Origin: Schizochytrium sp. TIO01
Lineage: Eukaryota; Protista; Bigyra: Labyrinthulomycetes
Direction: 5' to 3'
DNA: 64,000 nt
Assembly (NCBI GenBank): GCA_004764695.1
Contig: SMSO01000031.1
Location: forward strand, 3,200,436 to 3,264,435
This document shows positions 5,209 to 43,475 of this stretch, piece by piece. Positions within the stretch are counted from its first letter, which is position 1, and each line of letters begins with the position of its first letter. The position numbers and the translations under genes are program-made. The notes under the pieces are model-generated. The model searched no databases, was not told where the DNA came from, and saw only the letters and a program-made list of their open reading frames with translations.

Positions 5209-8200
5209 ATGTCAACCTCCAAGGCATTTGCAGGTGTTGACCCCATTATGCGTCGCACCATTGACCAGCGCGGCGAGGTCGCTGAAGAGTTGACCCGTCG
5301 TGCTAGCTGGAGATCTGCAAAGGAACTGATTGCAGAGGAAGCTCAGCGCCGTGATGTTGAGACGAAGACCACAATTGTGAATGAACAACTTCAGCGCACC
5401 ATGAGCCAGAAAATGGCATCCCGCATGCTTGATGAGGAGAAACAACGTCGAGTTGTACTGGCCATGGCTTCGGATGTGCTTGCCGAGCTCGAGCGTCGTG
5501 CCAACGCTGCTGAAGCTGATCGTGCTATGACCGAAGAGTTTGAGCGTCGTGTAGCCCAGGAGTCTGCCCTTCAGCAACAGGAAAATTCCGAGCGCACCGC
5601 CAACCAGATTCGCGCCAACGAGGACATGGACAATGAGAAGAAGCGTCGTGAATCTGTTGGTCTCCCCACCCAAGAAGCCGCATTTGGCCAGCTCTCTTGG
5701 TTTGCCAACGAAGTTGTTCGCGCAATCAACAAAAGCGCAGCACTTCTTGGCGAAGATGAAGAGCGCCGTCGTCGCATGATGGAAGATCTTCGTTCTCAGG
5801 TCGCTGGTGACCTTCAACGTAAGCTTAATGCTCGTAAGGCAGACCGTGGATCCGAGGCTGAGCGCGTACGGCGCATTGCTAGTGACAAGAAGATTGAGGT
5901 TATGTGCGAGCTTACTTCTCGTGCCGATCGTAAGCTCGCCAGCGAGCTCTCCGAGGCCGAGCGCCGCCGCCTTGTTGCAGCAAATGAGGACTTTCCCTAC
6001 GGACGAACCTCTGAGAACAAGTCTCAGATTCTTGAGAAAATCCATTCACGTCAGAGCCTTCTCACTGCCCTCAAGGCCGAAGAGGACGCCCGCAAGGAAT
6101 ATGCTTTGGCTGATCTATACCATAAGGTTGCTGAGGAGGTTTGCTTCCGGGTTAACAAAGCAGCAGCACTCGTTGCCCAAGAGAACGAGCGCTCTGAACG
6201 TGTGGCCCGTGCTAAGTTTATTGGTAATGTTGTTCCTGAGATTGAGGCACGTGGTCGTTTCAAGAGCATCTTGGAGCAAGTGCGGGCGGCACAAGAGGAT
6301 CTGACCAAGGCTATGCCTGAATCTCTTCGGCTCCGTGCTGAAGACCCCAACGTAGGGTCTTTGCTCGAAGATATTATTCGTCATGGCAATCAACAAAAAG
6401 CTCGCCGTCTTGCTGACGAAGAGAAAACTCGCCGTACGGCTGAGAACAGAAAGCTTGATGTTCTTGACGACCTACAGCGTGTTATCGCGCAAAAGAACGT
6501 CTCAAGCGAGGTCTCTCTTGAATCTGCACGTGCAAACCACATGCGTAAGTTCGAATTGGCGCGTGAGCAGGCTGCTGCGGAGGCCCGTTGGAAGGATCTT
6601 AGCTGCTTCATTGCTCGCGAGCAGTCTGAGGAAAAGAACGATGCTCCTCACTCTCCCACGCTCAAAGAAATCCTTGAATATGTTCGTTCCGATGTGGAAC
6701 GTCTTGGAGCGCGTCGTGAAGTTGCTCAGGCCGTCAAAGAGGAACAAGAGCGCCGCACGCAGGCTGCTCGTGGCGAGGACGTCTTCCCTGGTGTGATTCG
6801 CGCCGTGAACCAGCGCGAAGCCACTCGTGCATGCATCTTAGAACAGCACCAGCGTGTTGCACGTCTTAAAGGTGAAGAGGTCCTCTCAGAGTTGTCTCGA
6901 CGTGCTCTCCAGAACGCTGTTCGCGCACAGACTGAAACAGAGAGATCTTACCGTGAGGCCGGCATGAAGGACGAGCTTCTTCGTCGATCCAACTCAGCCA
7001 ACTTTCGCGAGGTCTTGGACGAAATTCAACGTGAGAGTTTACGCAACGAGGTACTTCGCCAGATGGATCTTGAACAATCTGAGCGGGTCAATCGTGACCG
7101 TCTCGGATGGGTTATAAGTGACTTGGAGCGACACTTGAACCGTCTGCGCGCTGCCAACGATGCCGAAATGGAGCGATGCCGCCGCGTTGGAGCCAACAAA
7201 ACTCGTGCAGTACTTGACGAACTCGTTCGCTACCATAACCGAATGATTGCCGATGGGCTTGTTTGTAATGAGCAAGCTCGTCGTGTCCGTGACATGGATG
7301 TGGAGCGGAACCGTCGTGCATCTTTCCTTCAATTTTACGACATTCTTGAACAGGTTGAGCGCAAGTATGCGCAGCAAGTCGCAATTCGTGACGCTGAACT
7401 CGAGCGCGACGCTCGTATGACTCAGGAGACCTTTGCCAAGGTGCTTACCCAGCTCATTCGCACAGCTGCTCAAAAGGACGCGGACTTTGCAATGGATGCC
7501 GAGCGTGTTCTTCGAATGGCTCAGGAAGCTTTTGAAGCAGTCAACGTAGAGTTTAAACGCCGTGTTAATGCACAGGCTGCTGACAAAGCTGCTGACCAGG
7601 AGCGTCTTGATCGCATTCGTCGTTTGAGTGAGGATGCTTCAGTGCTTGTGAACGTGATGGCGTCTCCGATTCCAATGGTTCACGAACAGCTTCGCCGTAA
7701 GGCCTCGTGGAAGCAATCTAAGGCAGCTTACGAAGAGGAGCAGACCCAGGCCGAGGTCCGTGAGCGCGGAGTATCAGTTCGCGAGGAGCTTCTTCGAATT
7801 GCAGCTGTCAAAGAAGTCGAGGCTGCAATCGAGCTTGAGCGCCAGCGACTTCTGCACATTGAGCGTACTCGCGCTGTCCATGAGGAAATGGCACGTGCGC
7901 GCAGCGTCAAACTCATTCATGCTGCCATTGAGCAGGAACGTAAGGAACGCATTGCGACTGCAGCAACGACTGCTATGAAGTTTGCCCTTACTGCAGCTAA
8001 CTACCAAAGGGATATTCCTTGTGCAGCAGCAACCCTGAGACGCCAGCGTGAAGAACGGCAACTCATCTACGAGGAGCAAAATCAGCAACAGGTTTCCTCG
8101 CCAGTGTCTAGGGCAAAGGTATCATCGTTGGAGCGCCTTTTGACTCAGTCAGAAAACAATGCAGTTCCCATTGTTGAGGAGCAGCACCGCCGCATGATGA

Positions 8201-9108
8201 AAGATCTCGATCAGGGAAGCGATGAGCATATCGCACGTCTCATGAACAGGCATTTGGCAAGCATGCTTTCTGATGAAGAGAAGTCTCGCAGGGTCTCTGA
8301 GATGCTAGAGGAGGACTCAGCTGCCGAGTTTGAGCGCCACCGTGCACAGCTAGAGGCTGCTTTCGAGATCAGCGTCGAGAAGCATGCTCGAACTCAGGCT
8401 GTTGCAGAAAGTTCAGAGAACCTCGATGAGGAGCGCCGTATCCGCCAGGAGTGGGCCAAATATGTATCAGACGAAGAACGTCGTCGCCGTATTTATGAGG
8501 CAGACCTTGGATTCACGAACACTCGTCCTCGCCCTGGTCACCTTGTTGCTTTGCTTTCTGCTGACTGCGATCTCTTTGACTTTACTCTGGTGGATGGCAG
8601 TGACACCAACGAACTCGACCAGGACTGGTCTGAGCTGTCTAACAACCTTTGCGTATCTCCCCGTGAGATCCGTCTCGAGAACGATCTCACATCAAGCATG
8701 CGATCTGCATTGGAGTTCTACCAGGAGCAGCAACGCCGGCGCATTGAGGATAAGGAGTGTGAGCTTGCTATTGACCTTGAGCGTAGCTTTAACAAAAGGC
8801 GCGCGCAGCATGAGCAAGACCTGGAGCGATTTAGCCGTGTCGAGCATGCTAAGCTGCAAGAGAGCATTAGCTCTCTTGAGCGCATGCATGCAGTAAACAG
8901 CGCAAAACGTATGGCTGATCTTGAGCGTGATCGCCGCATGCTTGAACGCACTTACGTTGAGAAGATGACTGCTGACACCAAGCGTGTAAACCAGCAAAAG
9001 GCAATTCGTGATATGGAAGAGGAACGCACCCGCCGTATTAATGAGAGTACTGAATTTCAGGAGGCCTTACAACGTGCTATTCGTGCCGAATTTGAGAGTT
9101 CCAAGTAA
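5209..9108 (+). CDS. 1299-aa E/R/A-rich alpha-helical protein with a recurring 33-aa repeat; probably cytoskeletal or flagellar-apparatus structural protein
   Basis: Long ATG-started ORF with strong codon bias (CGT/CGC, GAG, GCT). Units such as EEKQRRVVLAMASDVLAELERRANAAEADRAMT and AERVRRIASDKKIEVMCELTSRADRKLASELSE are each 33 aa. No catalytic motifs seen. Confidence 0.85.
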   Translation: MSTSKAFAGVDPIMRRTIDQRGEVAEELTRRASWRSAKELIAEEAQRRDVETKTTIVNEQLQRTMSQKMASRMLDEEKQRRVVLAMASDVLAELERRANAAEADRAMTEEFERRVAQESALQQQENSERTANQIRANEDMDNEKKRRESVGLPTQEAAFGQLSWFANEVVRAINKSAALLGEDEERRRRMMEDLRSQVAGDLQRKLNARKADRGSEAERVRRIASDKKIEVMCELTSRADRKLASELSEAERRRLVAANEDFPYGRTSENKSQILEKIHSRQSLLTALKAEEDARKEYALADLYHKVAEEVCFRVNKAAALVAQENERSERVARAKFIGNVVPEIEARGRFKSILEQVRAAQEDLTKAMPESLRLRAEDPNVGSLLEDIIRHGNQQKARRLADEEKTRRTAENRKLDVLDDLQRVIAQKNVSSEVSLESARANHMRKFELAREQAAAEARWKDLSCFIAREQSEEKNDAPHSPTLKEILEYVRSDVERLGARREVAQAVKEEQERRTQAARGEDVFPGVIRAVNQREATRACILEQHQRVARLKGEEVLSELSRRALQNAVRAQTETERSYREAGMKDELLRRSNSANFREVLDEIQRESLRNEVLRQMDLEQSERVNRDRLGWVISDLERHLNRLRAANDAEMERCRRVGANKTRAVLDELVRYHNRMIADGLVCNEQARRVRDMDVERNRRASFLQFYDILEQVERKYAQQVAIRDAELERDARMTQETFAKVLTQLIRTAAQKDADFAMDAERVLRMAQEAFEAVNVEFKRRVNAQAADKAADQERLDRIRRLSEDASVLVNVMASPIPMVHEQLRRKASWKQSKAAYEEEQTQAEVRERGVSVREELLRIAAVKEVEAAIELERQRLLHIERTRAVHEEMARARSVKLIHAAIEQERKERIATAATTAMKFALTAANYQRDIPCAAATLRRQREERQLIYEEQNQQQVSSPVSRAKVSSLERLLTQSENNAVPIVEEQHRRMMKDLDQGSDEHIARLMNRHLASMLSDEEKSRRVSEMLEEDSAAEFERHRAQLEAAFEISVEKHARTQAVAESSENLDEERRIRQEWAKYVSDEERRRRIYEADLGFTNTRPRPGHLVALLSADCDLFDFTLVDGSDTNELDQDWSELSNNLCVSPREIRLENDLTSSMRSALEFYQEQQRRRIEDKECELAIDLERSFNKRRAQHEQDLERFSRVEHAKLQESISSLERMHAVNSAKRMADLERDRRMLERTYVEKMTADTKRVNQQKAIRDMEEERTRRINESTEFQEALQRAIRAEFESSK

Positions 9109-9436: not shown

Positions 9437-12400
9437 CTACAAAGAGGGTTGCGGTGAGTCTGGTCGATCTACAGAAGCACTGATGCTACGCGCAGCATTG
9501 CGTTGTATTGCTGCAACATCTGTGGCATCCATGAAAGCAACAGCAGCATTTGAACCTTTACGATGAGATATCGTTCCATGGTCAGATGATGGATCAGAAT
9601 CAGTACGCACCTTGCCATCCTTGCCGATTGCAAATCCTGCCGAAGCAAGAACTTGCTCAAAGGTGGCTTCACGTACAGCCCAATCCTTCATTATTTCCTC
9701 GCGAGCCTCGTCGTTGAGACCTTCGCGAGTATATACTTCGTCCTCAAGAAGCCGCATCCAGTTATCACGATTCGTAGCAATCTGAATACATGGGTCTGAG
9801 GAGTTTGGGAGTAGGGTAGACATAGCAAAGAAAAGCGGTGCCACGATAAAGTCAATAAAGTTAATTGACATCTCTGCCTGGCTAGTTGTATCCCGATCCA
9901 TATTAGGAGAAACTTCCCAGCCGTTGGCGCGTTCAAGGTCACCTTGTGCATAAAATTCTTCGCAGACAAGATCTTGCCAGCGCTTAGAGCACGCCCAAGA
10001 TCTTGTAGGGTTACTAATATCGGAGCAGTGTAAGATTGACTTTGCAATCAAGCTACGCTCTTCTATATTCATGGAAGAGGTTGGCTCATCCATATGACGC
10101 ACGATGCAGTCTCTTAATTCGCCTGTTAGGTCGAAATGGCAAGTCATGTCTGTGGCGAGAATGCAATCTAGTACAATTTGACGAACACGCGTAACGCTTG
10201 CTTCGTCTAGATTGCACAAAATGTTCGTTGTATTGCTCTCAAACATACTGAACGTGCAGGCACAATGGTGGCTTTCTAGAACAGACCTACCTTCATAAAG
10301 CATAGCCAATTCTGTTTTAGCCTTCACTTGAAACGCATTGTTAAGACCAGGGTGTTCAAGGTCGTGGCAAAACGCTGCAATAGTAAGTGCGAACGCGTGC
10401 AAGTCGTCTAAGAACTCGCAACCGCGCATAGTAGTTAGCATACAGAAGGTACCTTGCAAGACATCACAAGCATGATCGTAATTGTGGTATGGATTGTGAT
10501 GCATCGTCATGCCTGCCTCCACACGCTCGACAAAGGCGACGAGCCTATCAGCAGGGACAGAAAACTTCGAGTCGGCGCCCATGGTGCGGAACATAAAGGA
10601 CACAAGGCTTGTGCGCATCTCAAGGGGAACCATCTGTAGATTGAAGTACCAAGACCCAGGGTCTAGCTCGCGCGGATCCTCAAGCTTCTGCTTATTCACA
10701 AATTTGTGATATCGAGTAACCACGCTATTCCAAGAGTCTGTTTTCTTCTTCATGATGGCAGGGCGCTTCACGCTAAAGCGTTTGCGAGCAGTAGCCGCGG
10801 CAGCTACAGCTGCCATTGTTGCTGCAGATGATGACGCCATGCTGTTATTCCGAGTATGTCCAAGAAGAGCAGAGGATGATGCTGAGCGTCCTAAAGCAAT
10901 CTCGCTTGTTCCACGTTCACTTGGTCCATCACCCTGGACACGTTGGTCAACTGCGGCGCGGGCAGCTTCAAGAGCTTGAGTACGTAGTTCATCGACATAA
11001 GTTGCAAGAGGAAGCTCATCAACTGCACCACGATCAACATTATTGTCTTCATCAGAGGTATCATCCTCCCCCTCCTCAGGAATAATGTTTGCCATTTCTT
11101 CTTCGGTACGATGAACACGAACTAGGGTCATAAGTGAAATACCTTTGCCAACATGAGCAAGCACAGCCCCAAGTGGTACAGGTCCAACTTCCACAGAAGA
11201 CTCCTCATCAGTGTAGCTAATAAGACGAGCACACGCCTGGATATAAGCATTTGCAAGAAACTCTGGAGAGTCTTGGTCGTCTGGAAACACAACGTCTTCG
11301 GCGGTTGAGCCAATACTTGCCATCGAAAGTCGCCGTGCAGCACCTGCTAGAGCATCATCAACGCTCTGTCGTCGCACCTCTGCACGTGTGAATTGAGAGC
11401 CAAGCCAGCGACGAGATTTTTCATCCAAACTTACAGGACTTACTAGCTCTGCAAAGGATCGCGTAAGCAAAAGTCGTTTGAGAACACCAAGAAGATCACG
11501 CTCGCCACGTGTCCGAGCTGCTTTAGCAACAAAATCAAGGTGCGCTAATGGAGCAGCCAAAGGGCCTTTATTTGCATCTGTTGTGAGAGTTCCACGACGG
11601 GAGCTTGGTACAGCAGTTGATGACGCAATTCGAGATCGCGTTCGTGTCAGAGTGCTGCTCCTCTGAAGTGGCTCTTGCAGAACTACAGGACTCTCAATTT
11701 CAGGTACCTTTTGAGAAAGATCGATTCGCATTGACTTGATCGGCTTTTTCTTCTTTGGTTGACGTTTGAGTGTTTCGCCACGACCGGCACCTGTTGGATC
11801 CACAAAGCTACCACCGCGTGTTCCTGTCTCGTTCCTCATGTTCATCTCCATATTATCTTGAAACATATCATCGGCAATCTCGCGTTGCTCAGAGAGGCTC
11901 GAATCTTCTGATGCCTTCGGGGAGCTGGCGACTGTCTCTTGCATTTGTTCTATATACTCCTCGTCAGCATCACGAACAATAAGTTGGAGGCCAACACTGA
12001 AGATGGTATGCTGGGTCTGGACTTCTGCGTACGGTTCATGGATATGAAGGTCCATGTCAAGGCGTGGAGAAACAATACGCCGTGCATATACATCCGCAAG
12101 TTGGACTGCACAATAGCCTAGCATGATATCAAAACCTAGAGCTGTGTCTGCTTGTCGCCAAAGGACAATTTCGAGTTTTGAGTTCCGGAGTGGCTGGCTT
12201 GCCCAGTCCACAAGGAGTTCTGGCGCAAGCTTAAACACAAAGCTTTCATTGAATTCTAAAAGTTCGGAGTGCACGGGAGCGGTCAGCATTGTTTGCTTGC
12301 GCACAAGTCGAGTTCCGTTGTAGATATTGATGAAAGCAGATGCATAGATCTCGGTCATTGGATTATTCGCTGATGCAGCAAGATGTCCGGAGCCAGGCTT

Positions 12401-15400
12401 TGAGCTCGTCAAAGAGGGGAGTCTATCTCCGAGTGTATGACTCACACCACGTAAAGTAATGATCAGACCTGATTCCTCGTCTGTTAGAACCTCTCCGAAG
12501 TCACATTTTGTTCGGCGACGGACAGGAAGCAGTTCGTTAATACTAGATGTGAGTGAGTTTCTAGCACCTACAAAGCGTGCTCCAAGCTTGTGACGGTTTA
12601 ATGTCATTGAGACACGTGAGAACCAGCGTCGAGTCTCTGTATCATCAGCCTCAGCAAAAGTAAAGTCCTTGTAGGTAAAATGCATTTCGCCACGACGAGA
12701 CCATTCTTCTGTTTTAACCTTAAATGCAAGACTGTGAACTCGATCTGAAGTGTCCTGAACCATCTCCACAGTAGCATCGTTTAGGTAAATGACCACATGG
12801 GCATCCACTGCTGTCATACGTCGAGGATCACGCTTCTTGAACAGCAGCATACAATCCTGCCGAAGAATGACGAAGCGTTCCTTCCAATCTGAAAAAATCT
12901 TCTTATTTCCTCCCGCAGGGCTTTGCTTTCTGATAGAGAGAAAGCCCTCCTTCTCCACCCGTGTTTGCCGAGGATCGCTGCTTTGGCGTAGCATTAAGGA
13001 TGCAGGCCGGGGTTGTAAATATGCTTTATCCTCCTTCTGAAGCTTCTCGAGCTCTAAGGCTGCCTTGAACTGATTCCTTGCACGCGTAATACTTGCAGCC
13101 AGTGATAATTTATGGCGTTTGAGAAGTCGATGGCGCAAAGTGCTCACGAGAAGAGTGTCTGCAAAGCGATATACATACTCATCATTGAAGGCATTTGCTC
13201 GAATCTTGTGGACAATTCCATGCTGATCAGCGAGATTCTCACAAGCAGCTTTTACTAGAGCTGCGGTGTAATCTTTGTGAAGGGAGTTTTGTGGATACAC
13301 ATCTTGAATCAGACGAAGAGAAAAGGTTGTACCAATCATGCAGGCAATTCGAAGAACCATTTGTTCAATAGAGCCTAATCGGTCAACAATTTCCCCAAGA
13401 ACACCCGCTGCGGTTCGGGGCGGAGCAACCTCGGTTGGGGGATAGTAATCAGCAGGAAATTTCATTGTTTCCATCTCATCCTCATTGATACCATCAGTTC
13501 CTGCGCTACTATGGTTCGCCGTACCTCCACTACCGTCATTCCCCGCGGCGTTCAAGAAAGCAGCTTGTTTACTTAAAGCTGCACGGTGTGCTGCATGCAG
13601 GGTCCATGCGGGTTCATCCAGATGTTGCACTGCGATACGCAGCGAGGCCATATACTTCAGGTTAGGGTCATATCCGCCAGCTCCCCGACGTACTTGCTTC
13701 TTGCCAGAACTAATCGGTGTAAATCTTACAAGTTTCGGTTTACGAGCTTCGCGGATCTCATGGGCAAACTCTTTGATAAGGAGAGGGTTATTGAAGCAGC
13801 GAGGTTCGCAAACTTGCCATAGGTCGGCGCTGATAACCTCAATATTTTCACCAACATTTTTGCGGAAGATGTCAATAGCCATCGCACGGGATAAAGGGCC
13901 TAGGGCGAGAATGTCAACACCATCGATCGAACACATTTCCCGAAAAGCCGGTAACGCGTTACGTGTACGAGATTCAACGAGGCGCGGTCGCAAACCCATG
14001 GTTCGATCCGCATACCCTTCAAATGGACGGAGAGCAATTACAAGCATTAGCTCAAGAGCATCACTGCATACTAAACTGGCTAGTTTAGAGGCAATTCGCC
14101 ATGAATGTTCATCAAGTCGCAAAGCATCGTCGAAGAGTATAATAAGACCGCCAAACTTGATGGTGACCTTGGAGATGATATCACAAATCATGTCTGAAAT
14201 GAGGTCATTAATATGAGCCTTGTATTGGGCAGGTGCAAGCTTCTCCAATGCTTGAGCAGCGTCACCGGAGGGAGGTGCAAAATTAGTACCAAGGTCTTCA
14301 TTGAGAAGGCTAGCGTACTCAATTAAGTTCTCGTCCAACACTCCTTGAAGAATTTGGGTTCGCACTTTGCTAGGATTTTTCCTTAAGGTTGACTTTGCAA
14401 GACTTGAAGCCTCAAAGAAGATCCACTGTGAAATAATATCAAACCAGACATGGTAATTCCGTTCGGCGTTACGAAATTTGAGGAACTGTGCTGTGCCATT
14501 CTCAGACTCAAAGAGTTGTTCAAACTGAGATGTGGTGTGTTCCCATTGTTCGGACGATCCCAAAACAGGCACGCTGTTTGGAAGAAAACCATAACCAAAC
14601 CGTTTAAGCATGTGAGTTTTGCCTGAACCAGGCTCTCCAGAAATAACAACAACAGATCCTTTGCCACATTCAACAAGTTCAATTTTTCGAGCCATGAGAG
14701 ACTGCAGAACGAAGGAGCTTGCAGATTGTATAACTTCTACGTCTTTCCGAGGGACTGCCACTAGTTTAAGAGTTGTTCCTCCATTACCAGACATGTCATT
14801 ATATACGCTCGCGTTGCTCCCCCCAAGTGATGGGACCTTGCGCAGAGAAGGGTCATCGTGCGACTTTAAACCTTTTGTTGGTACTAGTTCGATGGTGGAG
14901 TTCCAAATTTCACCAAAGCCCAGCGCCTCATTGACTACAGCCTCAAGGTATTTAAAGGGAACACCCATTGCCTCGGGACGTGGTGCATCAGTACCTTCAC
15001 CTAGGGAGTCGATGCGTTCCCGATTTGTTGCCCAAATGTCCATATTTAACACTACTTCAGTACCCTGGATCATGAGAGCTACATCCGATGTAGACACACC
15101 ATGTCGCATGAGACCAACGTTTTTACAATACTCCGTTACGTTCCGCAGTAGCGACTTTGTTTCGTCCTGACCTTGGTCGTGACGATCCACCGAGGCAACG
15201 CAATAGAGATCCCCTGCACCAACAGCAACTTGACTACATGTGATGAGGTATTCCGGATCGACCTTTTCGCCTGAAGTTGACAGATGAGAGGAGGTACGGT
15301 TCGCATTATTGTAAAAGATGAGACTCTTTCGTGGACTAGTGGATCTTGGGCCATAGCTACTTTGCCCTGATGATGTGTGATTACTAGGCGTGCTGTGTAG

Positions 15401-17353
15401 CTCGTAGGCAAACTCTCCATCCAATGAATCACCTTGTGAATCTGAGTCTAAAACCTCCTGTACGGTGCCCTTGCGAGCAGCCTTTGATTTGCTGCCAGAA
15501 AACAAGGCTTTAAGTCGTTGACTAGATCGTTGATGTACTCGACCCAGGCTGTTATGAGGCTTCCGACGCTGAGCGCCGCTCCGAGCCCCGAGAAGTGTGT
15601 TGGGTACACGAAAGTACATGCGGAGATTTTCATTTTTCTGTTCACTTGTTTCCTCAATTTCAAGGAGGCGTGTAGTACCTAATATATCAAAAGATATGAA
15701 GCGTTCAGAAGAATGAGCTAACATCGCAGCAGTTGCAGCTTGTCCTTTGATAGGAAATCGAGGCCCAAGTAAGTGCATTGTGGGAGCATGAACAAGGTTT
15801 GATGCCGTGCTATCAGAGCGAGCTTTGGAGCTACTCCGTGTAATTGCATGGCCTAGTAGGGTACCACGGTTTTTCTTCTTTTTCTCTATCGCTTCGCCCT
15901 TTCTGTTTGCTGAGGAGTATGCCAAAGCGTCCAAACTTGTTAATGGTTCAAAAACAACAATTGGGGCGGCTTTTCCTTTCACCTTGACCGGTGCCAGCGC
16001 TCGAAAAGGGATATCACGACTGCAGGTGATATAAGTAGCTTCATCGCAAATAATCGTCGATCCACCCTCAGATTTCATACTTACGATAGCTGCACCCATC
16101 AAACGCGCAGAAAGATTAACAATGTCGCCCAAAACAGAGTACTCTTTGCGTGTCTGGCTGCCAAGTACACCACAGAAAGCTGTTCCAGAGGTTATTCCAA
16201 CAGCAGGGTTCATGTTGAGCTTTTCTCGCAACTCTGTAGCTGCATGCAACGAAGAGGAGACAGCGCGCTTTGCATCATTTTCATGACTGTAGGGCGGCAA
16301 GCCAAAAAGTACAATTATGGTTGCTCCCTTGTCATCAACGATGAATTTATTTAGCGCACCTTCATATTTGTAAGCAGACGTCTGGACAATACGCATAGCT
16401 TCGTGCAACACAAGCATTTCATCACCACCCTTTGCGGCTTCTTGTACCTCAGATTCTGAGAGACCAAGACTTATAAAAACCACAGAAACATGACGCAACT
16501 CTGAGCTAAAGTATTCAAATTCAGGATGTTCAGAATCAATTGACTGGAGTGCGGCAGCAGGGATAAGTTGACGGATCCGACGCTCGGTCAACCCGGTATA
16601 TGAGTCAAAAAGATTAAGGCCAAATTGCTTGTTACGGGCCCGGCCTGTCGCCGTAACAGAGTCTAAATCGATTCGCACAAAACTACCATGTCGAGCGCGC
16701 TTAGGGCTTGGCATTTTAATCCCCTTGAAGAACTTTGAGATTTGTTTCCATGCAGGAGGAGATGCAATCACTTCTCCTGCTGAGGCCATACCTTCAGCGG
16801 CAAATGCCTGGCTCATAGGTTCGCCTACAGCAATGTATTCTGTCCTTCCTTTGACACCTCCTAGATGAAGAATGGCTAAAGAGCCTACGCCAACTCCAAT
16901 CTTAATACTTAGCGATACAGAGTCGTCATCAAAGGCAAGGCCTTGGCCAAGGCCTTGAATGCGTACTGCACTCTGGGTTGCTCTACGAGCGCGGTCGCCA
17001 ATGCTCTCTTCATCGCTTGTGGGAGGCCAAAGCACAATCATTGCATCACCTGCAAATTTGAAGACATCGCCACCTTCTGAGTTGATAATTTTCACGAGCT
17101 GACTAAAATACGAGTTCAACTGTTTGGCAAGATGCTCCGCGCCAGCGTGAGGGCCATACTGAATTGACATACTTTCACTGAGTTTGGTAAACCCACTGAC
17201 ATCAGCAAAAAGACATGCTGCATCATACGTTGCAAGGCGAGGCTTTGTGGCATCATGTTTCACTCCAGTTTGGTTTTCCTCCTCTTCGAGCTGAAGGATT
17301 TCCTCGACGACCAACGAAGGTAAGTAGCTCGCAAGTAGCTCAATATACCTCAT
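9437..17353 (-). CDS. Soluble adenylyl cyclase (ADCY10/sAC-like, tandem class III domains) - STAND/AAA P-loop - PH - C2 - class I cyclic nucleotide phosphodiesterase fusion, ~2638 aa
   Basis: Cyclase C1: LFADVSGFTKLSE and GGDVFKFAGDA. Cyclase C2: NKFIVDDKG, GITSGTAFCG and EYSVLGDIVNLSARLM. Walker A GEPGSGKT (~14615-14640) and Walker B LIILFDD. PH: EKEGFLSIRK...WKERFVILR...RRWFSRV. C2-like: FNESFVF...LEIVLW...MLGYCAVQL. PDEase_I: PYHNYDHACDV, HDLEHPGLNN, LESHH, LATDM, CSDISNP, EEFYAQGDLE. The ORF track starts at TTG 17377; the first ATG is at 17353. Confidence 0.92.
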   Translation of the reverse strand: MRYIELLASYLPSLVVEEILQLEEEENQTGVKHDATKPRLATYDAACLFADVSGFTKLSESMSIQYGPHAGAEHLAKQLNSYFSQLVKIINSEGGDVFKFAGDAMIVLWPPTSDEESIGDRARRATQSAVRIQGLGQGLAFDDDSVSLSIKIGVGVGSLAILHLGGVKGRTEYIAVGEPMSQAFAAEGMASAGEVIASPPAWKQISKFFKGIKMPSPKRARHGSFVRIDLDSVTATGRARNKQFGLNLFDSYTGLTERRIRQLIPAAALQSIDSEHPEFEYFSSELRHVSVVFISLGLSESEVQEAAKGGDEMLVLHEAMRIVQTSAYKYEGALNKFIVDDKGATIIVLFGLPPYSHENDAKRAVSSSLHAATELREKLNMNPAVGITSGTAFCGVLGSQTRKEYSVLGDIVNLSARLMGAAIVSMKSEGGSTIICDEATYITCSRDIPFRALAPVKVKGKAAPIVVFEPLTSLDALAYSSANRKGEAIEKKKKNRGTLLGHAITRSSSKARSDSTASNLVHAPTMHLLGPRFPIKGQAATAAMLAHSSERFISFDILGTTRLLEIEETSEQKNENLRMYFRVPNTLLGARSGAQRRKPHNSLGRVHQRSSQRLKALFSGSKSKAARKGTVQEVLDSDSQGDSLDGEFAYELHSTPSNHTSSGQSSYGPRSTSPRKSLIFYNNANRTSSHLSTSGEKVDPEYLITCSQVAVGAGDLYCVASVDRHDQGQDETKSLLRNVTEYCKNVGLMRHGVSTSDVALMIQGTEVVLNMDIWATNRERIDSLGEGTDAPRPEAMGVPFKYLEAVVNEALGFGEIWNSTIELVPTKGLKSHDDPSLRKVPSLGGSNASVYNDMSGNGGTTLKLVAVPRKDVEVIQSASSFVLQSLMARKIELVECGKGSVVVISGEPGSGKTHMLKRFGYGFLPNSVPVLGSSEQWEHTTSQFEQLFESENGTAQFLKFRNAERNYHVWFDIISQWIFFEASSLAKSTLRKNPSKVRTQILQGVLDENLIEYASLLNEDLGTNFAPPSGDAAQALEKLAPAQYKAHINDLISDMICDIISKVTIKFGGLIILFDDALRLDEHSWRIASKLASLVCSDALELMLVIALRPFEGYADRTMGLRPRLVESRTRNALPAFREMCSIDGVDILALGPLSRAMAIDIFRKNVGENIEVISADLWQVCEPRCFNNPLLIKEFAHEIREARKPKLVRFTPISSGKKQVRRGAGGYDPNLKYMASLRIAVQHLDEPAWTLHAAHRAALSKQAAFLNAAGNDGSGGTANHSSAGTDGINEDEMETMKFPADYYPPTEVAPPRTAAGVLGEIVDRLGSIEQMVLRIACMIGTTFSLRLIQDVYPQNSLHKDYTAALVKAACENLADQHGIVHKIRANAFNDEYVYRFADTLLVSTLRHRLLKRHKLSLAASITRARNQFKAALELEKLQKEDKAYLQPRPASLMLRQSSDPRQTRVEKEGFLSIRKQSPAGGNKKIFSDWKERFVILRQDCMLLFKKRDPRRMTAVDAHVVIYLNDATVEMVQDTSDRVHSLAFKVKTEEWSRRGEMHFTYKDFTFAEADDTETRRWFSRVSMTLNRHKLGARFVGARNSLTSSINELLPVRRRTKCDFGEVLTDEESGLIITLRGVSHTLGDRLPSLTSSKPGSGHLAASANNPMTEIYASAFINIYNGTRLVRKQTMLTAPVHSELLEFNESFVFKLAPELLVDWASQPLRNSKLEIVLWRQADTALGFDIMLGYCAVQLADVYARRIVSPRLDMDLHIHEPYAEVQTQHTIFSVGLQLIVRDADEEYIEQMQETVASSPKASEDSSLSEQREIADDMFQDNMEMNMRNETGTRGGSFVDPTGAGRGETLKRQPKKKKPIKSMRIDLSQKVPEIESPVVLQEPLQRSSTLTRTRSRIASSTAVPSSRRGTLTTDANKGPLAAPLAHLDFVAKAARTRGERDLLGVLKRLLLTRSFAELVSPVSLDEKSRRWLGSQFTRAEVRRQSVDDALAGAARRLSMASIGSTAEDVVFPDDQDSPEFLANAYIQACARLISYTDEESSVEVGPVPLGAVLAHVGKGISLMTLVRVHRTEEEMANIIPEEGEDDTSDEDNNVDRGAVDELPLATYVDELRTQALEAARAAVDQRVQGDGPSERGTSEIALGRSASSSALLGHTRNNSMASSSAATMAAVAAAATARKRFSVKRPAIMKKKTDSWNSVVTRYHKFVNKQKLEDPRELDPGSWYFNLQMVPLEMRTSLVSFMFRTMGADSKFSVPADRLVAFVERVEAGMTMHHNPYHNYDHACDVLQGTFCMLTTMRGCEFLDDLHAFALTIAAFCHDLEHPGLNNAFQVKAKTELAMLYEGRSVLESHHCACTFSMFESNTTNILCNLDEASVTRVRQIVLDCILATDMTCHFDLTGELRDCIVRHMDEPTSSMNIEERSLIAKSILHCSDISNPTRSWACSKRWQDLVCEEFYAQGDLERANGWEVSPNMDRDTTSQAEMSINFIDFIVAPLFFAMSTLLPNSSDPCIQIATNRDNWMRLLEDEVYTREGLNDEAREEIMKDWAVREATFEQVLASAGFAIGKDGKVRTDSDPSSDHGTISHRKGSNAAVAFMDATDVAAIQRNAARSISASVDRPDSPQPSL

Positions 17354-17809
17354 GTTCACGTGTTCACGCCTTTTCAATACTTATAAATCCCTTTCTGCGT
17401 TGGATCACTCCAGAAACGCTTCGTATTCGCCCTCTCCCACGTCCAAGAGATAAGCTGTATCAAGCGGCACGTGCAGCTCTAACTAAAGTGTGCCAGCGCG
17501 TGAATCCTTTCACGAGCTGGCCGTCGCGGTCGCCTCAGCTGAGACTTGCGCCTCCGCAGCGGCGAGCGTCAGGAAGCGGGTAGACCCTTGACCCACTCAG
17601 TTCTCGCTCGCGTTCTCTGGGCTCTTTCGGCAGCCACCACGTAAATGGCTAGCTACGTGAACCTCAACAAACGAAAAAATTAGCCTTTACCTAACCAAGC
17701 AAGCAATGTCCAACGCAGATCCAGCAGAGAGGGAGAAAGTAGAGGACGGCAAGCCGCGTAATCAACCACAAGTTGTCCACAACGTCGCAGCTATCCCTGC
17801 CGCTATCTT

Positions 17810-21052: not shown

Positions 21053-21985
21053 TTACGGAAAGAGCTTGCGAATATTTGATGGTGCCCTATTAAAAGACCG
21101 AGATGAGTACTGCAGTGTGCTAAGGGCAGCAGAGCTGTTTTCACCATTCCATGCACGAAGCGCTTGCACAAGGCGTTTCATGGAAACAGCACTTCCCTTG
21201 ACAAAGGCGCCCTCTTGATCGATTTTATCATAGAGCACAGCAGCAATGACAGAGGAGAGCAAAATTGTTTGCAAGGCGTCTGGATCCGGTGCTGTCCCCT
21301 TGCTTGTGTAGCGCGAGGCGCTAAATGCTGTAAGGTTGGCGAAATCGGCCAGGAAAGGAACAAGTCCGCGCACGCTCTTGACCAAGTTTGATAAATCATT
21401 CGTGAGCGTAGAGAGCAGCGGGCTACCTTGTGCCACAAACATAGAAATGGCCGAGGCCTGTGAGTCATTAACTGGGGCCCTTGGGTTACTTGTGTTCCGT
21501 GAGAGCTCACGCCTGTAAAAACTAAAATCATTTTGCACAGCAGGTTTGGACATTTTGGCCCAGTCAAAGAGAAAAACAGCCTCAAAGAGAGCCGCGAGCT
21601 TGACCACAAGCGCTTGGTAGTTACTGTTGCCAACACCACCATGGGGGCTTGCAACAATTCGTAAGATATCACACACAGCAGCGTTCAAATTTGCTGAAAG
21701 ATCGTAGAAGGAGCGAATGCCATCCACATTAGGGAACATGCCCTCAAAGGCTTCCTGGCGAATTTTTTGGTCATTCGGGTTTGCCAAAGCCTGCTGGACA
21801 AGTTTACTGTTTGCTTGATAGTTCTTGAGAAACTGGATACAATGTTCATACTCCTGCAGAGCAACCTCAGCACGTTCGTACGCAGCACGCGCCGAGTTAT
21901 CGCTCGGTGCTTCTGCGTTACGAAGCTCCAATACATCCCCAGAGTATGAGGAGGAAGGAGAAAGTGACGAAAGTAATGAACCCAT
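21053..21985 (-). CDS. CYRI: CYRI / FAM49 (CYFIP-related Rac1 interactor, DUF1394) homolog, 310 aa
   Basis: Signature FDWAKMSKPAVQNDFSFYRRELSR matches FAM49 FDELKMxNPAIQNDFSYYRRTLSR, including the Rac-binding RR. N-terminal MGSLLS fits N-myristoylation. The C-terminal LYDKIDQEGAF and LQYSS segments and the length also fit the family. Confidence 0.93.
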   Translation of the reverse strand: MGSLLSSLSPSSSYSGDVLELRNAEAPSDNSARAAYERAEVALQEYEHCIQFLKNYQANSKLVQQALANPNDQKIRQEAFEGMFPNVDGIRSFYDLSANLNAAVCDILRIVASPHGGVGNSNYQALVVKLAALFEAVFLFDWAKMSKPAVQNDFSFYRRELSRNTSNPRAPVNDSQASAISMFVAQGSPLLSTLTNDLSNLVKSVRGLVPFLADFANLTAFSASRYTSKGTAPDPDALQTILLSSVIAAVLYDKIDQEGAFVKGSAVSMKRLVQALRAWNGENSSAALSTLQYSSRSFNRAPSNIRKLFP

Positions 21986-31373: not shown

Positions 31374-32243
31374 GCAAAAACTACCAAGGAAGCTACATTT
31401 CCCTGTAATTATTACTATCTCCCATTTCTTTCTCTACTAATACAAACATTCAAGGGGTTTGAAATAGAGAGGCCGTATTTAGGGCTTCATATTCAAGATG
31501 ACAAATTAAAACAAAATTTAGTGTCGAATGAAATCACAACCGTAGAACAACCCTGCGTGTTACTTGAAATTGTTACCACCGCTCTCTCGGAACTAATATT
31601 CTCACTTTTTCCCTCAACAACATGCTAAGAACATCTCTACAATCAGACAGCAGATACTCAGAACCCCCCAACATCCATTTATTAGCTATAAAGATTATCA
31701 GAGCTGACTCTATTTCACCGGCAATAAAGCAAAGGTCCACAAACTAGGAGGTGATAAGGGAAACCAAGCCATCTCAGCTTCTAAAACAGTGCTGGCCTCA
31801 ACGGATCAATGGGGTATATTACCAAGGAATGCCTTATACAATTTTTTCTTATATAGACTCTCGAATAGTTGTATTGGGGACACAAGTACTTAGTTACAAC
31901 ACATACTTCTATAATACCCCTTTAACATACATGTGACGGTCTTAATGGTGTGAGAAGAGCTCAGTTGCAATTGCAGACCTTCCTGTAAAAGGGGTTATAG
32001 TTTTTTGGGCACTTAGTTGTCTGGACAATCGCATTCGAAAGAATAATTGCAAACAAGCAAACCATTGACTGGTTGATCCACCTCGTCGGGTTGACCAGCT
32101 TATTTGTTTCTAGTTTGCGTGGCTGGTTGGCCAAGACGACTAGAGCTCTCGCGTCGTCGCGTTTCGTTTGATCTCGGAAGGTTGACTCCAATAGTGTCAT
32201 TGTTTGATTGTAGTAGGTGCAAGTAAGGCTTGGATACCTGCTC

Positions 32244-42407: not shown

Positions 42408-43475
42408 TTACATGAGGACGCCGGAGCCGCGCAAATTCATTCGAAGTACATGCTGACTGGAGAGGCGCATGACAGTGTCGACTTGTTGAGTGTCAGTAGC
42501 ACAAGTCACGTGCGTGAAAATCTCGCGATGGGGGTCCTCGCATTGCTCCTTAAAAATATCCTGGAACCATTCCAGAGCAGCGTCGATGTCCTTGTTGTCA
42601 GTAGGAGCGGTAGGAAAGAGACCAGAGTCATTGAGGGGAATGCCGCGCTCCAGAAATTTCTCGCGAAAGAGATCCACCTTGTTGAGAAAGAGAATCATAG
42701 CTGAGGAGGTAAACCACTCAGAGTTGACAATCTCATGGAACAACTCGAGAGACTCCTCCAGACGGTTTTTACCTGCATCTTCGAAAAGGGTCTGATCATA
42801 TTCAGAGAGACTAGCCACGAAGATGACCGATGTGACACCCTCGAAGCAGTGAATCCACTTGCGGCGCTCGTTACGTTGACCACCAACGTCTAACATACGG
42901 AGCTTGATATCCTTTACCACAAACTGTTCATCGACAACACCAGTTGTACGGACGCGAGATTTGAGAATATCATCCTTGGAAGGGACCCAGTCCGGGCCAC
43001 CCCATGTAGGGTAGTTTCTAAGTTCCTCGGCGTACTCGTGCCAGGTGTCTTGGAGCTGGAAGTGGCTACGTTGATCCCAGATTTCCTTGAACTGAGGATC
43101 ATCCCAAAGGTGCACAATTGCAGCTGCAATTTCATCTGTCATGGAGCGCTTGTCGTCAAGATCAAGGATAAGCTCAGCATCTCTGACGGCTTCAGGCTCT
43201 GTAATTTTAATCTGAAGCGCCTCACCAGCATGAAGGATATCCATGCAACCCTCAATAACGTTTCCGATGAGAAATGGGCGAAGCTTAGCGCACTCCTCCT
43301 CGGAGTAGCCAGCGCCGTAGATAAGGCGCATTTGCTTGAAGAGAGTGGACTTGCCAGATTCACCAGCACCGAGCAGAAGCAATTTAATCTGCTTCTGATT
43401 CTGCTTCTGGGACCGCATAAGGTTCAAGCTCACGCGCTTGGAGCGCGCCTGATCTACGGAGGTCTTGTTGCCCAT
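42408..43475 (-). CDS. Heterotrimeric G-protein alpha subunit, 355 aa
   Basis: All five G boxes are present: LLLLGAGESGKST, RVRTTG, DVGGQRNERRKW, LFLNKVD and TCATD. N-terminal MGNKTS is a myristoylation motif. Confidence 0.97.
   Translation of the reverse strand: MGNKTSVDQARSKRVSLNLMRSQKQNQKQIKLLLLGAGESGKSTLFKQMRLIYGAGYSEEECAKLRPFLIGNVIEGCMDILHAGEALQIKITEPEAVRDAELILDLDDKRSMTDEIAAAIVHLWDDPQFKEIWDQRSHFQLQDTWHEYAEELRNYPTWGGPDWVPSKDDILKSRVRTTGVVDEQFVVKDIKLRMLDVGGQRNERRKWIHCFEGVTSVIFVASLSEYDQTLFEDAGKNRLEESLELFHEIVNSEWFTSSAMILFLNKVDLFREKFLERGIPLNDSGLFPTAPTDNKDIDAALEWFQDIFKEQCEDPHREIFTHVTCATDTQQVDTVMRLSSQHVLRMNLRGSGVLM

What the first reader, a model, noticed from the sequence alone, without database searches (positions are those of the whole stretch)
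9437..17353. One polypeptide that both makes and destroys cAMP: sAC cyclase - STAND ATPase - PH - C2 - phosphodiesterase
Seen: one uninterrupted ORF holds tandem class III cyclase domains, Walker A/B, PH and C2-like domains, and a class I PDE with its metal-binding motifs (HNxxH, HDxxHxGxxN, ExHH, TDM, SDISN). No transmembrane helix is evident. Known: animal ADCY10 and Dictyostelium sGC have cyclase+STAND followed by helical repeats, not a PDE. The plant CAPE enzyme combines PDE and AC in the opposite order, is membrane-bound and is linked to sperm motility. Inference: this is an independently evolved, soluble source-plus-sink that is gated by the STAND switch and recruited to membranes through PH/C2. 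It could generate very local or pulsed cAMP, possibly in flagellated cells. I know of no characterised protein with this architecture.
Basis: partly seen in the sequence, partly recalled or inferred. Interest (0 to 1): 0.88.

Follow-up and report, generated by a model that had tools for sequence, protein, structure and literature searches.

The report
Soluble cyclase fused to a phosphodiesterase
A marine protist (thraustochytrid) gene encodes one 2,638-residue soluble protein that joins a cAMP-making enzyme of the 'soluble adenylyl cyclase' type, an NTP-driven switch, two membrane-binding domains and a cyclic-nucleotide-destroying enzyme; the combination is real, is shared by other stramenopiles, and is not described in any paper I could search.

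Summary
Window 9437-17353 (minus strand) is one uninterrupted ORF of 2,638 codons from its first ATG. It contains:
- a tandem sAC-type class III cyclase (best PDB match human ADCY10, 6.5e-38);
- a STAND-type P-loop module (Walker A GEPGSGKT, Walker B LIILFDD; the model's best fold matches are CED-4, NRC3 and Apaf-1);
- a PH domain (Pfam 8e-9) and a C2 domain (no Pfam hit here; fold match TM 0.73);
- a class I phosphodiesterase (Pfam 1.7e-80).

No transmembrane helix is evident. Every catalytic and metal-binding residue of both enzymes is present.

It differs from the textbook enzymes in two ways. The bicarbonate-site arginine of human sAC is a family-invariant Phe. The purine-reading glutamine of PDEs is Ser, with a conserved Gln one helical turn earlier.

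Both ends match the Hondaea fermentalgiana ortholog (60% identity, 2,639 aa). About 30 colinear relatives exist, including Cafeteria, Paraphysomonas and complete transcriptome-derived ORFs. The fusion is therefore a conserved stramenopile gene, not an artefact.

It arose independently of plant CAPE, which has the opposite order, transmembrane helices and a single cyclase domain.

Verdict: new variant of a known kind. The scan had noted a sister gene (sAC-STAND-PH-GNAT) in this genome before.

The parts
9437..17353 (-). Complete single-exon coding sequence (2,638 codons plus stop at 9437-9439)
   Evidence: The N-terminus MRYIELLASYLPS and the C-terminus SPQPSL both match the Hondaea ortholog P0002. 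The alignment to it covers 100% of the query.
16688..17233 (-). Cyclase domain C1 (residues 41-222): metal Asp51 and Asp103, Lys99; Phe184 in place of human sAC Arg176
   Evidence: Aligned to human ADCY10 residues 33-214. Residues tabulated over 23 family members.
15944..16576 (-). Cyclase domain C2 (residues 260-470): Lys336, Ser406, Asn413, Arg417
   Evidence: Aligned to human ADCY10 residues 265-432. These columns are conserved in 21 of the 23 family members tabulated and invariant in A1.
14717..15943 (-). Residues 471-879. Residues 480-680 are poorly conserved, basic and Ser-rich. Residues 680-880 are moderately conserved within the Hondaea-like clade. Fold unknown.
   Evidence: Per-window identity profile. 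No Pfam hit.
13034..14716 (-). STAND-type nucleotide-binding oligomerisation module (residues 880-1440)
   Evidence: Pfam AAA_16 and nSTAND3 give weak hits here, and AAA_16 hits all 10 aligned members. The AlphaFold model (pLDDT 74.9) has CED-4, NRC3 and Apaf-1 as best Foldseek matches, followed by ORC/Cdc6.
14615..14638 (-). Walker A, GEPGSGKT (residues 906-913)
   Evidence: G-x-G-K-[ST] is conserved in all 23 members.
14126..14146 (-). Walker B, LIILFDD (residues 1070-1076)
   Evidence: Asp1075 is invariant in A1.
12605..12958 (-). PH domain (residues 1466-1583), with conserved basic residues Lys1491 and Arg1493 on strand beta-2
   Evidence: Pfam PH 36.4 bits against a cut-off of 25.1. Fold match to GRP1 PH, TM 0.69. 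W1490, K1491 and R1493 are invariant.
11969..12472 (-). C2 domain (residues 1628-1795), with a long low-confidence first loop and few acidic loop residues
   Evidence: AlphaFold model plus Foldseek. Pfam C2 hits in four orthologs. Alignment block.
11381..11548 (-). Conserved linker motif (residues 1936-1991): HLDF...LLTRSF...LDExSRxWLGSQFTR. Function unknown.
   Evidence: The local HMM for this motif finds it in the majority of family members.
11099..11266 (-). Degenerate GYF-like segment (residues 2030-2085). Only the Gly-Pro core is kept.
   Evidence: It aligns to the GYF domains of the ochrophyte and bicosoecid orthologs.
9677..10663 (-). Class I cyclic-nucleotide phosphodiesterase catalytic domain (residues 2231-2559): His2290, His2294, His2330, Asp2331, His2334, Glu2360, His2362/2363, Thr2401, Asp2402, Asp2445; Ser2496 at the canonical glutamine position and Gln2492 four residues before it
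   Evidence: Pfam PDEase_I 1.7e-80. Alignment to PDE1B 5b25, 2.4e-54. Residue tables.

Best explanation
This is a genuine, intron-less nuclear gene of a thraustochytrid. It encodes a soluble, multi-domain cyclic-nucleotide enzyme. Its N-terminal sAC-type C1-C2 pair most likely converts ATP to cAMP. Its C-terminal class I PDE most likely hydrolyses a 3',5'-cyclic nucleotide. The product therefore carries its own sink.

Between the two enzymes sit three modules:
- a STAND NTPase, inferred to be an NTP-dependent conformational or oligomerisation switch, as in other STAND proteins;
- a PH domain with the basic motif typical of phosphoinositide binders;
- a C2 domain that probably does not bind calcium.
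These are inferred to place the enzyme on membranes and to set the balance between synthesis and breakdown, giving local or self-terminating signals.

Shown here: the domain composition, intact catalytic residues in both halves, colinear conservation across stramenopiles, and a likely single origin inside an expanded sAC-STAND-PH family.

Inferred only: the activities, the nucleotide, the gating and the localisation.
For: Gene model: a single ORF whose two ends match the Hondaea ortholog.

Cyclase: the best PDB matches are human ADCY10 catalytic cores, with both C1 and C2 aligned. The metal Asp pair, Lys336/Ser406 (human Lys334/Thr405), Asn413 and Arg417 are all present and are conserved in 21 of 23 relatives.

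PDE: 270 bits to PDEase_I, with all metal and acid-base residues aligned to PDE1B.

Selection: identity to the four closest orthologs is 0.6-0.84 in the cyclase, 0.56-0.79 in the PDE core and 0.1-0.3 in the linkers. Both enzymes are therefore under purifying selection.

Switch and targeting domains: STAND fold; PH and C2 folds.

Distribution: about 30 colinear cyclase-NOD-PH-(C2)-PDE proteins. They include complete ORFs from MMETSP transcriptome assemblies (P0019 and P0051), so orthologs are transcribed as one mRNA.

Origin: in a quick ML tree, the cyclase regions of all PDE-bearing members that also have the NOD fall in one group. The PH-GNAT paralog of this genome is a close neighbour.
Against: - No enzymatic, expression or localisation data exist for any member.
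- The PDE has Ser instead of the canonical purine-reading Gln, so neither affinity nor cAMP/cGMP preference can be read from the sequence.
- The bicarbonate-site Arg of human sAC is Phe, so sAC-style regulation is unlikely.
- AAA_16 scores below its Pfam cut-off in this protein.
- Foldseek TM-scores for the NOD are low (about 0.3), although STAND proteins lead the ranking.
- Some relatives have lost catalytic residues in one half (cyclase in P0020 and P0021; PDE partly in Cafeteria P0010). Dual activity is therefore not obligatory in the family.
- The group that unites the PDE-bearing cyclases has only SH-aLRT 82, and the tree was a quick search.
Confidence: 0.6

Rival explanations
1. Cross-talk enzyme. 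The two halves act on different nucleotides: the cyclase makes cAMP while the PDE removes cGMP, or the cyclase is a guanylyl cyclase as in Dictyostelium sGC. The protein would then couple two messenger pools rather than make and destroy one.
For: PDB matches to the PDE span the dual-specificity PDE1B (2.4e-54), cAMP-specific PDE4 (about 1e-51) and cGMP-specific PDE9 (about 5e-45), with no clear preference. The specificity glutamine is replaced. A sAC-topology enzyme in Dictyostelium is a guanylyl cyclase (PMC8684759).
Against: The Lys336/Ser406 pair corresponds to the adenine-recognising Lys334/Thr405 of human sAC (the residue roles are from established sAC structural work, recalled from memory). 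Nothing in the sequence points positively to cGMP.
Confidence: 0.2
2. One half is regulatory rather than catalytic in vivo. For example, the PDE domain could act mainly as a product-binding sensor or autoinhibitory module, or the cyclase could serve as a scaffold. This would resemble the many GGDEF-EAL proteins in which one domain is silent.
For: Family members exist with a degenerate cyclase (P0020 and P0021: metal Asp to Arg, Asn to Lys, Arg to Gln) or a partly degenerate PDE (Cafeteria P0010; the in-genome paralog L001 has TSV for TDM). In Dictyostelium, the sGC protein has a function that does not need catalysis (PMC8684759).
Against: In this protein and in 21 of 23 relatives, every catalytic residue of both halves is kept. 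Both cores are the most conserved parts of the protein.
Confidence: 0.15
3. Gene-model or assembly artefact: two neighbouring genes that only appear joined.
For: No direct read-level RNA evidence could be obtained for this locus.
Against: There is no stop codon in 7.9 kb. The Hondaea ortholog is colinear over its full length (2,639 aa) with matching termini. About 30 independent colinear sequences exist from genomes, metagenomes and transcriptomes.
Confidence: 0.03

Closest known systems
Mammalian soluble adenylyl cyclase (ADCY10, full-length sAC) and Dictyostelium sGC
   Same: All have an N-terminal tandem C1-C2 class III cyclase in one chain, with the same catalytic residues and a conserved N-terminal 'A-x-(Y/H)-L-P-x-L-(V/I)-V' lead-in. 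A P-loop STAND/AAA-type module follows the cyclase. All are soluble.
   Different: No TPR or helical-repeat tail follows the NOD; PH, C2 and a PDE follow instead. The bicarbonate-site Arg176 is Phe in the whole family. The product nucleotide is untested.
CAPE (COMBINED AC with PDE) of Marchantia and other streptophytes, and the 'CAPE-like' proteins of Saprolegniales (PMC5159850, PMC8115329)
   Same: A class III cyclase and a class I PDE in one polypeptide. MpCAPE has both activities in vitro.
   Different: [quoted passage not shown] It has no STAND, PH or C2. Here the order is reversed, the cyclase is a sAC-type tandem pair, and no transmembrane helix exists. The Saprolegniales proteins are listed with a single AC domain in that paper's tables. 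I could not fetch their sequences.
Class I PDEs (closest solved structures: PDE1B, PDE4A/B/D, PDE9A)
   Same: Full catalytic fold and all metal-binding and acid-base residues; 270 bits to Pfam PDEase_I.
   Different: The invariant purine-scanning glutamine is Ser2496, with a conserved Gln four residues upstream. Many other PDE sequences recovered with this query share this variant (49 Ser against 45 Gln among 132 non-fusion hits).
Bifunctional second-messenger enzymes with opposing activities (bacterial GGDEF-EAL proteins, Rel/SpoT)
   Same: Synthesis and degradation domains on one chain. Some family members carry one degenerate half, a pattern well known for GGDEF-EAL proteins (comparison from general knowledge).
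   Different: The folds, the messengers and the kingdom are all unrelated. This is an analogy only.
The sAC-STAND-PH-GNAT paralog of the same genome (earlier scan note s1-821849; L007 here)
   Same: Same cyclase-AAA_16-PH core. It is the neighbour of the PDE-bearing group in the cyclase tree.
   Different: It ends in a GNAT acetyltransferase-like domain rather than C2-PDE. One metagenomic relative (P0033) carries both GNAT and PDE.

Membership tests
sAC-type (ADCY10-like) class III cyclase | Two cyclase homology domains (C1, C2) in tandem on one chain, most similar to sAC | tested here: met
   phmmer against PDB: ADCY10 is the top match at 6.5e-38, with two stretches (query 37-222 and 260-441).
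sAC-type (ADCY10-like) class III cyclase | Catalytic residues: two metal Asp in C1; Lys and Thr (purine), Asn and Arg (transition state) in C2 | tested here: met
   D51, D103, K336, S406 (Thr to Ser), N413 and R417.
sAC-type (ADCY10-like) class III cyclase | Bicarbonate-binding pair Lys95/Arg176 | tested here: not met
   The Lys is kept (K99), but Arg176 aligns to Phe184. This position is Phe in 21 of the 23 relatives tabulated.
sAC-type (ADCY10-like) class III cyclase | C-terminal P-loop module followed by TPR-like repeats | tested here: inconclusive
   The P-loop/STAND module is present. No TPR hit was found; PH, C2 and a PDE follow instead.
Class I 3',5'-cyclic nucleotide phosphodiesterase (PF00233) | Profile score above the curated cut-off | tested here: met
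   270.6 bits against a cut-off of 24.8.
Class I 3',5'-cyclic nucleotide phosphodiesterase (PF00233) | His/Asp metal ligands and general-acid His (HNxxH, HDxxH, ExHH, TDM, D of DISN) | tested here: met
Class I 3',5'-cyclic nucleotide phosphodiesterase (PF00233) | Invariant purine-scanning glutamine ('glutamine switch') | tested here: not met
   Ser2496 occupies the position aligned to the Gln of PDE1B. A conserved Gln sits at position -4.
Class I 3',5'-cyclic nucleotide phosphodiesterase (PF00233) | Hydrolytic activity on cAMP or cGMP | not testable with these tools
   Needs an enzyme assay.
STAND NTPase | Walker A and Walker B (hhhhDD/E) motifs | tested here: met
   GEPGSGKT at 906-913 and LIILFDD at 1070-1076, conserved across the family.
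STAND NTPase | NBD-helical-winged-helix fold resembling known STAND proteins | tested here: met
   Model of residues 880-1445 (pLDDT 74.9). Foldseek ranks 1-11 are CED-4, NRC3 and Apaf-1 (5e-7 to 4e-5), though TM-scores are only about 0.3.
STAND NTPase | Pfam AAA_16 above the gathering score | tested here: not met
   26.1 bits against a cut-off of 32.6 in this protein. All 10 aligned members hit at E<0.01, best 7e-10.
CAPE | N-terminal PDE, transmembrane helices, single C-terminal cyclase domain | tested here: not met
   The order is reversed, the cyclase is a tandem pair, and there is no transmembrane helix. The CAPE layout is taken from PMC5159850.
PH domain | Profile score above cut-off, and the fold | tested here: met
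   36.4 bits against 25.1. GRP1 PH, TM 0.69.
C2 domain | Eight-stranded beta-sandwich fold | tested here: met
   Foldseek: 3jzy TM 0.73, 7jof and 3l9b about 0.70. There is no Pfam C2 hit in this protein itself.
C2 domain | Cluster of Asp residues in the calcium-binding loops | tested here: inconclusive
   The aligned loops hold few acidic residues. This was judged by eye from the sequence only; no coordinates were inspected.

The most novel reading that the evidence does not exclude
The STAND module acts as a reciprocal switch. Its NTP state or its oligomerisation on PH/C2-bound membranes would turn the cyclase on and the PDE off, and then the reverse. One protein would then emit self-terminating, spatially confined cAMP pulses. 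That would make it a eukaryotic analogue of Rel/SpoT-type reciprocal control, and it would give the first assignable function to the enigmatic P-loop region of sAC-family cyclases.
Probability: 0.15. Interest if true: 0.85.

Novelty: new variant of a known kind. Interest (0 to 1): 0.6.

Why it matters
Cells usually shape cAMP signals by placing separate cyclases and phosphodiesterases near each other. Here evolution has welded the two together, with a STAND switch and two lipid-binding domains in between, and has kept that arrangement across deep stramenopile lineages.

The family is a natural test bed for three questions:
- How does a source-plus-sink enzyme shape local second-messenger signals?
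- What does the poorly understood P-loop/STAND region of soluble adenylyl cyclases do?
- What happens to PDE substrate recognition when the canonical glutamine is moved one helical turn?

Thraustochytrids such as Aurantiochytrium are described as genetically tractable (PMC12221091), so the predictions can be tested. The compact soluble architecture could also interest people who build synthetic cAMP circuits.

Tried and rejected
No direct transcript evidence exists for this locus.
- The protein-atlas search gave only weak leads (cyclase/AAA_16 clusters, scores 0.79 or less).
- Nine full-text literature searches found no description of this architecture. They found only CAPE and the Saprolegniales 'CAPE-like' proteins.
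- The Roelofs 2001 paper on Dictyostelium sGC is not held, so its specificity residues could not be compared.
- The Aurantiochytrium zoospore proteome paper and its supplements list no cyclase or PDE of this kind.
- Transmembrane anchoring is rejected.
- CAPE membership is rejected: order, topology and cyclase type all differ.
- Bicarbonate regulation through the sAC Arg176 site is judged unlikely (Phe184).
- The exhaustive representative search with residues 1440-2638 was dominated by stand-alone PDEs and added few new full-length members.
- The careful ML tree did not finish in the time allowed. Only the quick tree is reported.
Full report
**The sequence.** The finding sits on the minus strand. 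The ORF listing gives one ORF, 9437..17377, of 2,646 codons from a TTG. The first ATG is at 17353, giving 2,638 residues. The first residues, MRYIELLASYLPS, and the last, SPQPSL, both match the Hondaea fermentalgiana protein P0002 (2,639 aa, 60% identity, 100% coverage). Start, stop and the absence of introns are therefore well supported. The genome is 64 Mb in 37 contigs. The neighbouring ORFs are ordinary eukaryotic genes: CYRI, Tubby, exportin-5, a G-alpha subunit and a multi-PDZ protein. The organism is a thraustochytrid-like labyrinthulomycete.

**Domains.** Pfam finds four families:
- Guanylate_cyc, two stretches
- AAA_16, residues 897-1102, 26.1 bits, below its 32.6-bit cut-off
- PH, residues 1466-1583
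- PDEase_I, residues 2289-2520, 270.6 bits

The first 490 residues match human ADCY10 catalytic cores best (6.5e-38), with separate alignments for C1 (37-222) and C2 (260-441).

An AlphaFold model of residues 880-1445 was built on a 24-sequence alignment (pLDDT 74.9). Its best Foldseek matches are the STAND proteins CED-4, NRC3 and Apaf-1, followed by ORC/Cdc6. Together with Walker A GEPGSGKT and Walker B LIILFDD, this supports a STAND module.

A model of residues 1455-1800 (pLDDT 72.5) matches both PH domains (GRP1, TM 0.69) and C2 domains (intersectin-2, TM 0.73; dysferlin and otoferlin C2A). Four orthologs also hit Pfam C2.

Hydrophobicity peaks all lie inside domain cores, so the protein is soluble by sequence.

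**Catalytic competence.** In the cyclase, these positions align to human sAC D47, D99, K95, K334, T405, N412 and R416:
- the two metal aspartates, D51 and D103
- Lys99
- the purine-contact pair, K336 and S406
- N413 and R417

They are conserved in 21 of 23 relatives. The roles of the human residues are established knowledge, recalled from memory rather than tested here. Human Arg176, which binds bicarbonate, aligns to Phe184. That position is Phe in 21 of the 23 relatives, so sAC-style bicarbonate activation is unlikely.

In the PDE, the general-acid His and all metal ligands are in place: H2290, H2294, H2330, D2331, H2334, E2360, H2362/3, T2401, D2402 and D2445. The one departure is the purine-scanning glutamine. 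It is Ser2496 here, and Ser in 34 of 41 family PDE domains, with a conserved Gln four residues upstream. Many other PDE hits share this variant. Substrate preference therefore cannot be read from the sequence. The closest solved structures include dual-specificity, cAMP-specific and cGMP-specific enzymes.

**Conservation.** Per-window identity to the four closest orthologs is 0.6-0.84 in the cyclase, 0.44-0.72 in the NOD, 0.56-0.79 in the PDE core and 0.1-0.3 in the linkers. Both enzymes are under constraint.

Two searches of the 5.8-billion-protein collection returned about 30 clusters carrying both PF00211 and PF00233 at lengths of 2,000-3,600 aa. Local HMMs cut from alignment A1 show that these are colinear: cyclase, NOD, PH, usually C2, a conserved linker motif, then PDE.

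Named sources are:
- Hondaea (Labyrinthulomycetes)
- Cafeteria roenbergensis (Bicosoecida)
- Paraphysomonas (Chrysophyceae)
- an entry labelled Durusdinium trenchii that groups with the Hondaea-like clade

P0019 and P0051 are complete ORFs from MMETSP transcriptome assemblies. In relatives, the whole architecture is therefore on one mRNA. Ochrophyte and bicosoecid members also carry a GYF domain before the PDE, which is degenerate in this protein.

**Family context.** This genome holds at least nine sAC-type cyclase plus AAA_16 paralogs. One of them (L007) ends in PH plus GNAT.

Only one other locus combines cyclase and PDE. It lies at contig 30, 5.678-5.685 Mb (L001). Its cyclase, NOD remnant (no Walker A) and PDE lie in three successive reading frames, and its PDE has TSV in place of TDM.

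A quick ML tree of the cyclase regions puts all 29 PDE-bearing, NOD-containing sequences in one group (SH-aLRT 82). That group sits inside a well-supported clade (98) together with the PH-GNAT paralog. This fits a single fusion inside a sAC-STAND-PH lineage whose C-terminal output domain varies. The careful tree did not finish, so this conclusion is provisional.

Two metagenomic members (P0020 and P0021) have a degenerate cyclase on a very long branch but an intact PDE. Cafeteria's PDE is partly degenerate. This resembles the pattern seen in bacterial GGDEF-EAL proteins.

**Mechanism.** The best-supported reading is a soluble enzyme that makes a cyclic nucleotide, most likely cAMP given the Lys/Ser pair, and carries its own hydrolase. 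The STAND module is inferred to be the regulatory switch, and PH and C2 the membrane-targeting devices. The PH basic motif K1491/R1493 is invariant. The C2 loops are poor in acidic residues, which suggests calcium-independent binding (sequence inspection only).

None of these steps has been measured. The main rivals are:
- different nucleotides for the two halves. A sAC-topology enzyme is a guanylyl cyclase in Dictyostelium (PMC8684759);
- a regulatory, non-catalytic role for one half;
- an artefactual gene model, which is effectively excluded.

**Comparison with what is known.** CAPE of streptophytes (PMC5159850) also joins a class III cyclase and a class I PDE, and MpCAPE has both activities. 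However, CAPE runs PDE, transmembrane helices, then a single cyclase domain, with no STAND, PH or C2. The 2021 CAPE survey (PMC8115329) mentions independently evolved 'CAPE-like' proteins in Saprolegniales. Its tables list these with one AC domain. My searches did not recover them, and I could not fetch them.

Nine full-text searches found no paper describing the sAC-STAND-PH-C2-PDE layout. Database names are generic: 'cAMP-specific phosphodiesterase' or 'class 3 adenylate cyclase'.

I rate it a new variant of a known kind: a sAC-family cyclase and a bifunctional cyclase/PDE. It is real and conserved, and it is of clear interest to cyclic-nucleotide specialists. It is not a new category.

**Limits.**
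No reads were laid on the locus.
- Taxon labels are missing for most relatives.
- Both structure models are of moderate confidence.

Noticed in passing
L001:3271-9788 (G000 contig 30, about 5,678,270-5,684,790), minus strand: A second cyclase...PDE locus in the same genome. It consists of three consecutive same-strand ORFs (1,186, 666 and 375 aa). They hold an intact sAC-type cyclase, a NOD remnant without Walker A, and a PDE whose domain is split between ORFs 2 and 3 near a C6 homopolymer. TDM is replaced by TSV. It could have tiny introns, assembly indels or be a decaying pseudogene; this is unresolved.
   Followed up: partly
P0020, P0021 (metagenomic relatives); P0010 (Cafeteria roenbergensis): Some family members have one degenerate half. 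P0020 and P0021 have lost the cyclase metal Asp, Asn and Arg but keep an intact PDE. Cafeteria keeps the cyclase but has several PDE motif changes (HT for HN, N for the D of TDM, DVSG for DISN).
   Followed up: partly
P0033 (JGI metagenome protein, 2,951 aa): This relative carries GNAT acetyltransferase domains as well as the PDE. It links the PDE-ending genes to the PH-GNAT-ending paralogs.
   Followed up: no
P0004 (NCBI CAK9060722.1, labelled Durusdinium trenchii): A protein labelled as dinoflagellate is colinear with this one (2,642 aa, 41% identity). In the cyclase tree it nests inside the Hondaea/window clade with full support. It is possibly a labyrinthulomycete contaminant in that assembly, or a gene transfer.
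   Followed up: no
PDE hits P0052-P0190: Many PDE sequences close to this one share the motif Q-x-x-x-[ST]-x-N-F in place of the canonical x-x-x-x-Q-x-G-F. They may form a PDE subclade with a relocated purine-reading glutamine.
   Followed up: partly
G000 loci L003-L010: The genome holds at least nine sAC-type cyclase plus AAA_16 paralogs of 1,200-2,840 aa. Their N- and C-terminal extensions vary. One shows a NACHT-like hit, and one has PH plus GNAT.
   Followed up: partly
window 5209-9105 (+): A 1,299-aa ORF lies convergent with the cyclase-PDE gene, with stops about 330 bp apart. It has no Pfam hit at E<=1e-4.
   Followed up: no
window 42411-43475 (-), 32217-34466 (+), 21056-21985 (-): A heterotrimeric G-alpha subunit, a Tubby-domain protein and a CYRI (Rac1-binding) protein lie within 30 kb. 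There is no evidence that they are functionally linked to the cyclase-PDE gene.
   Followed up: no
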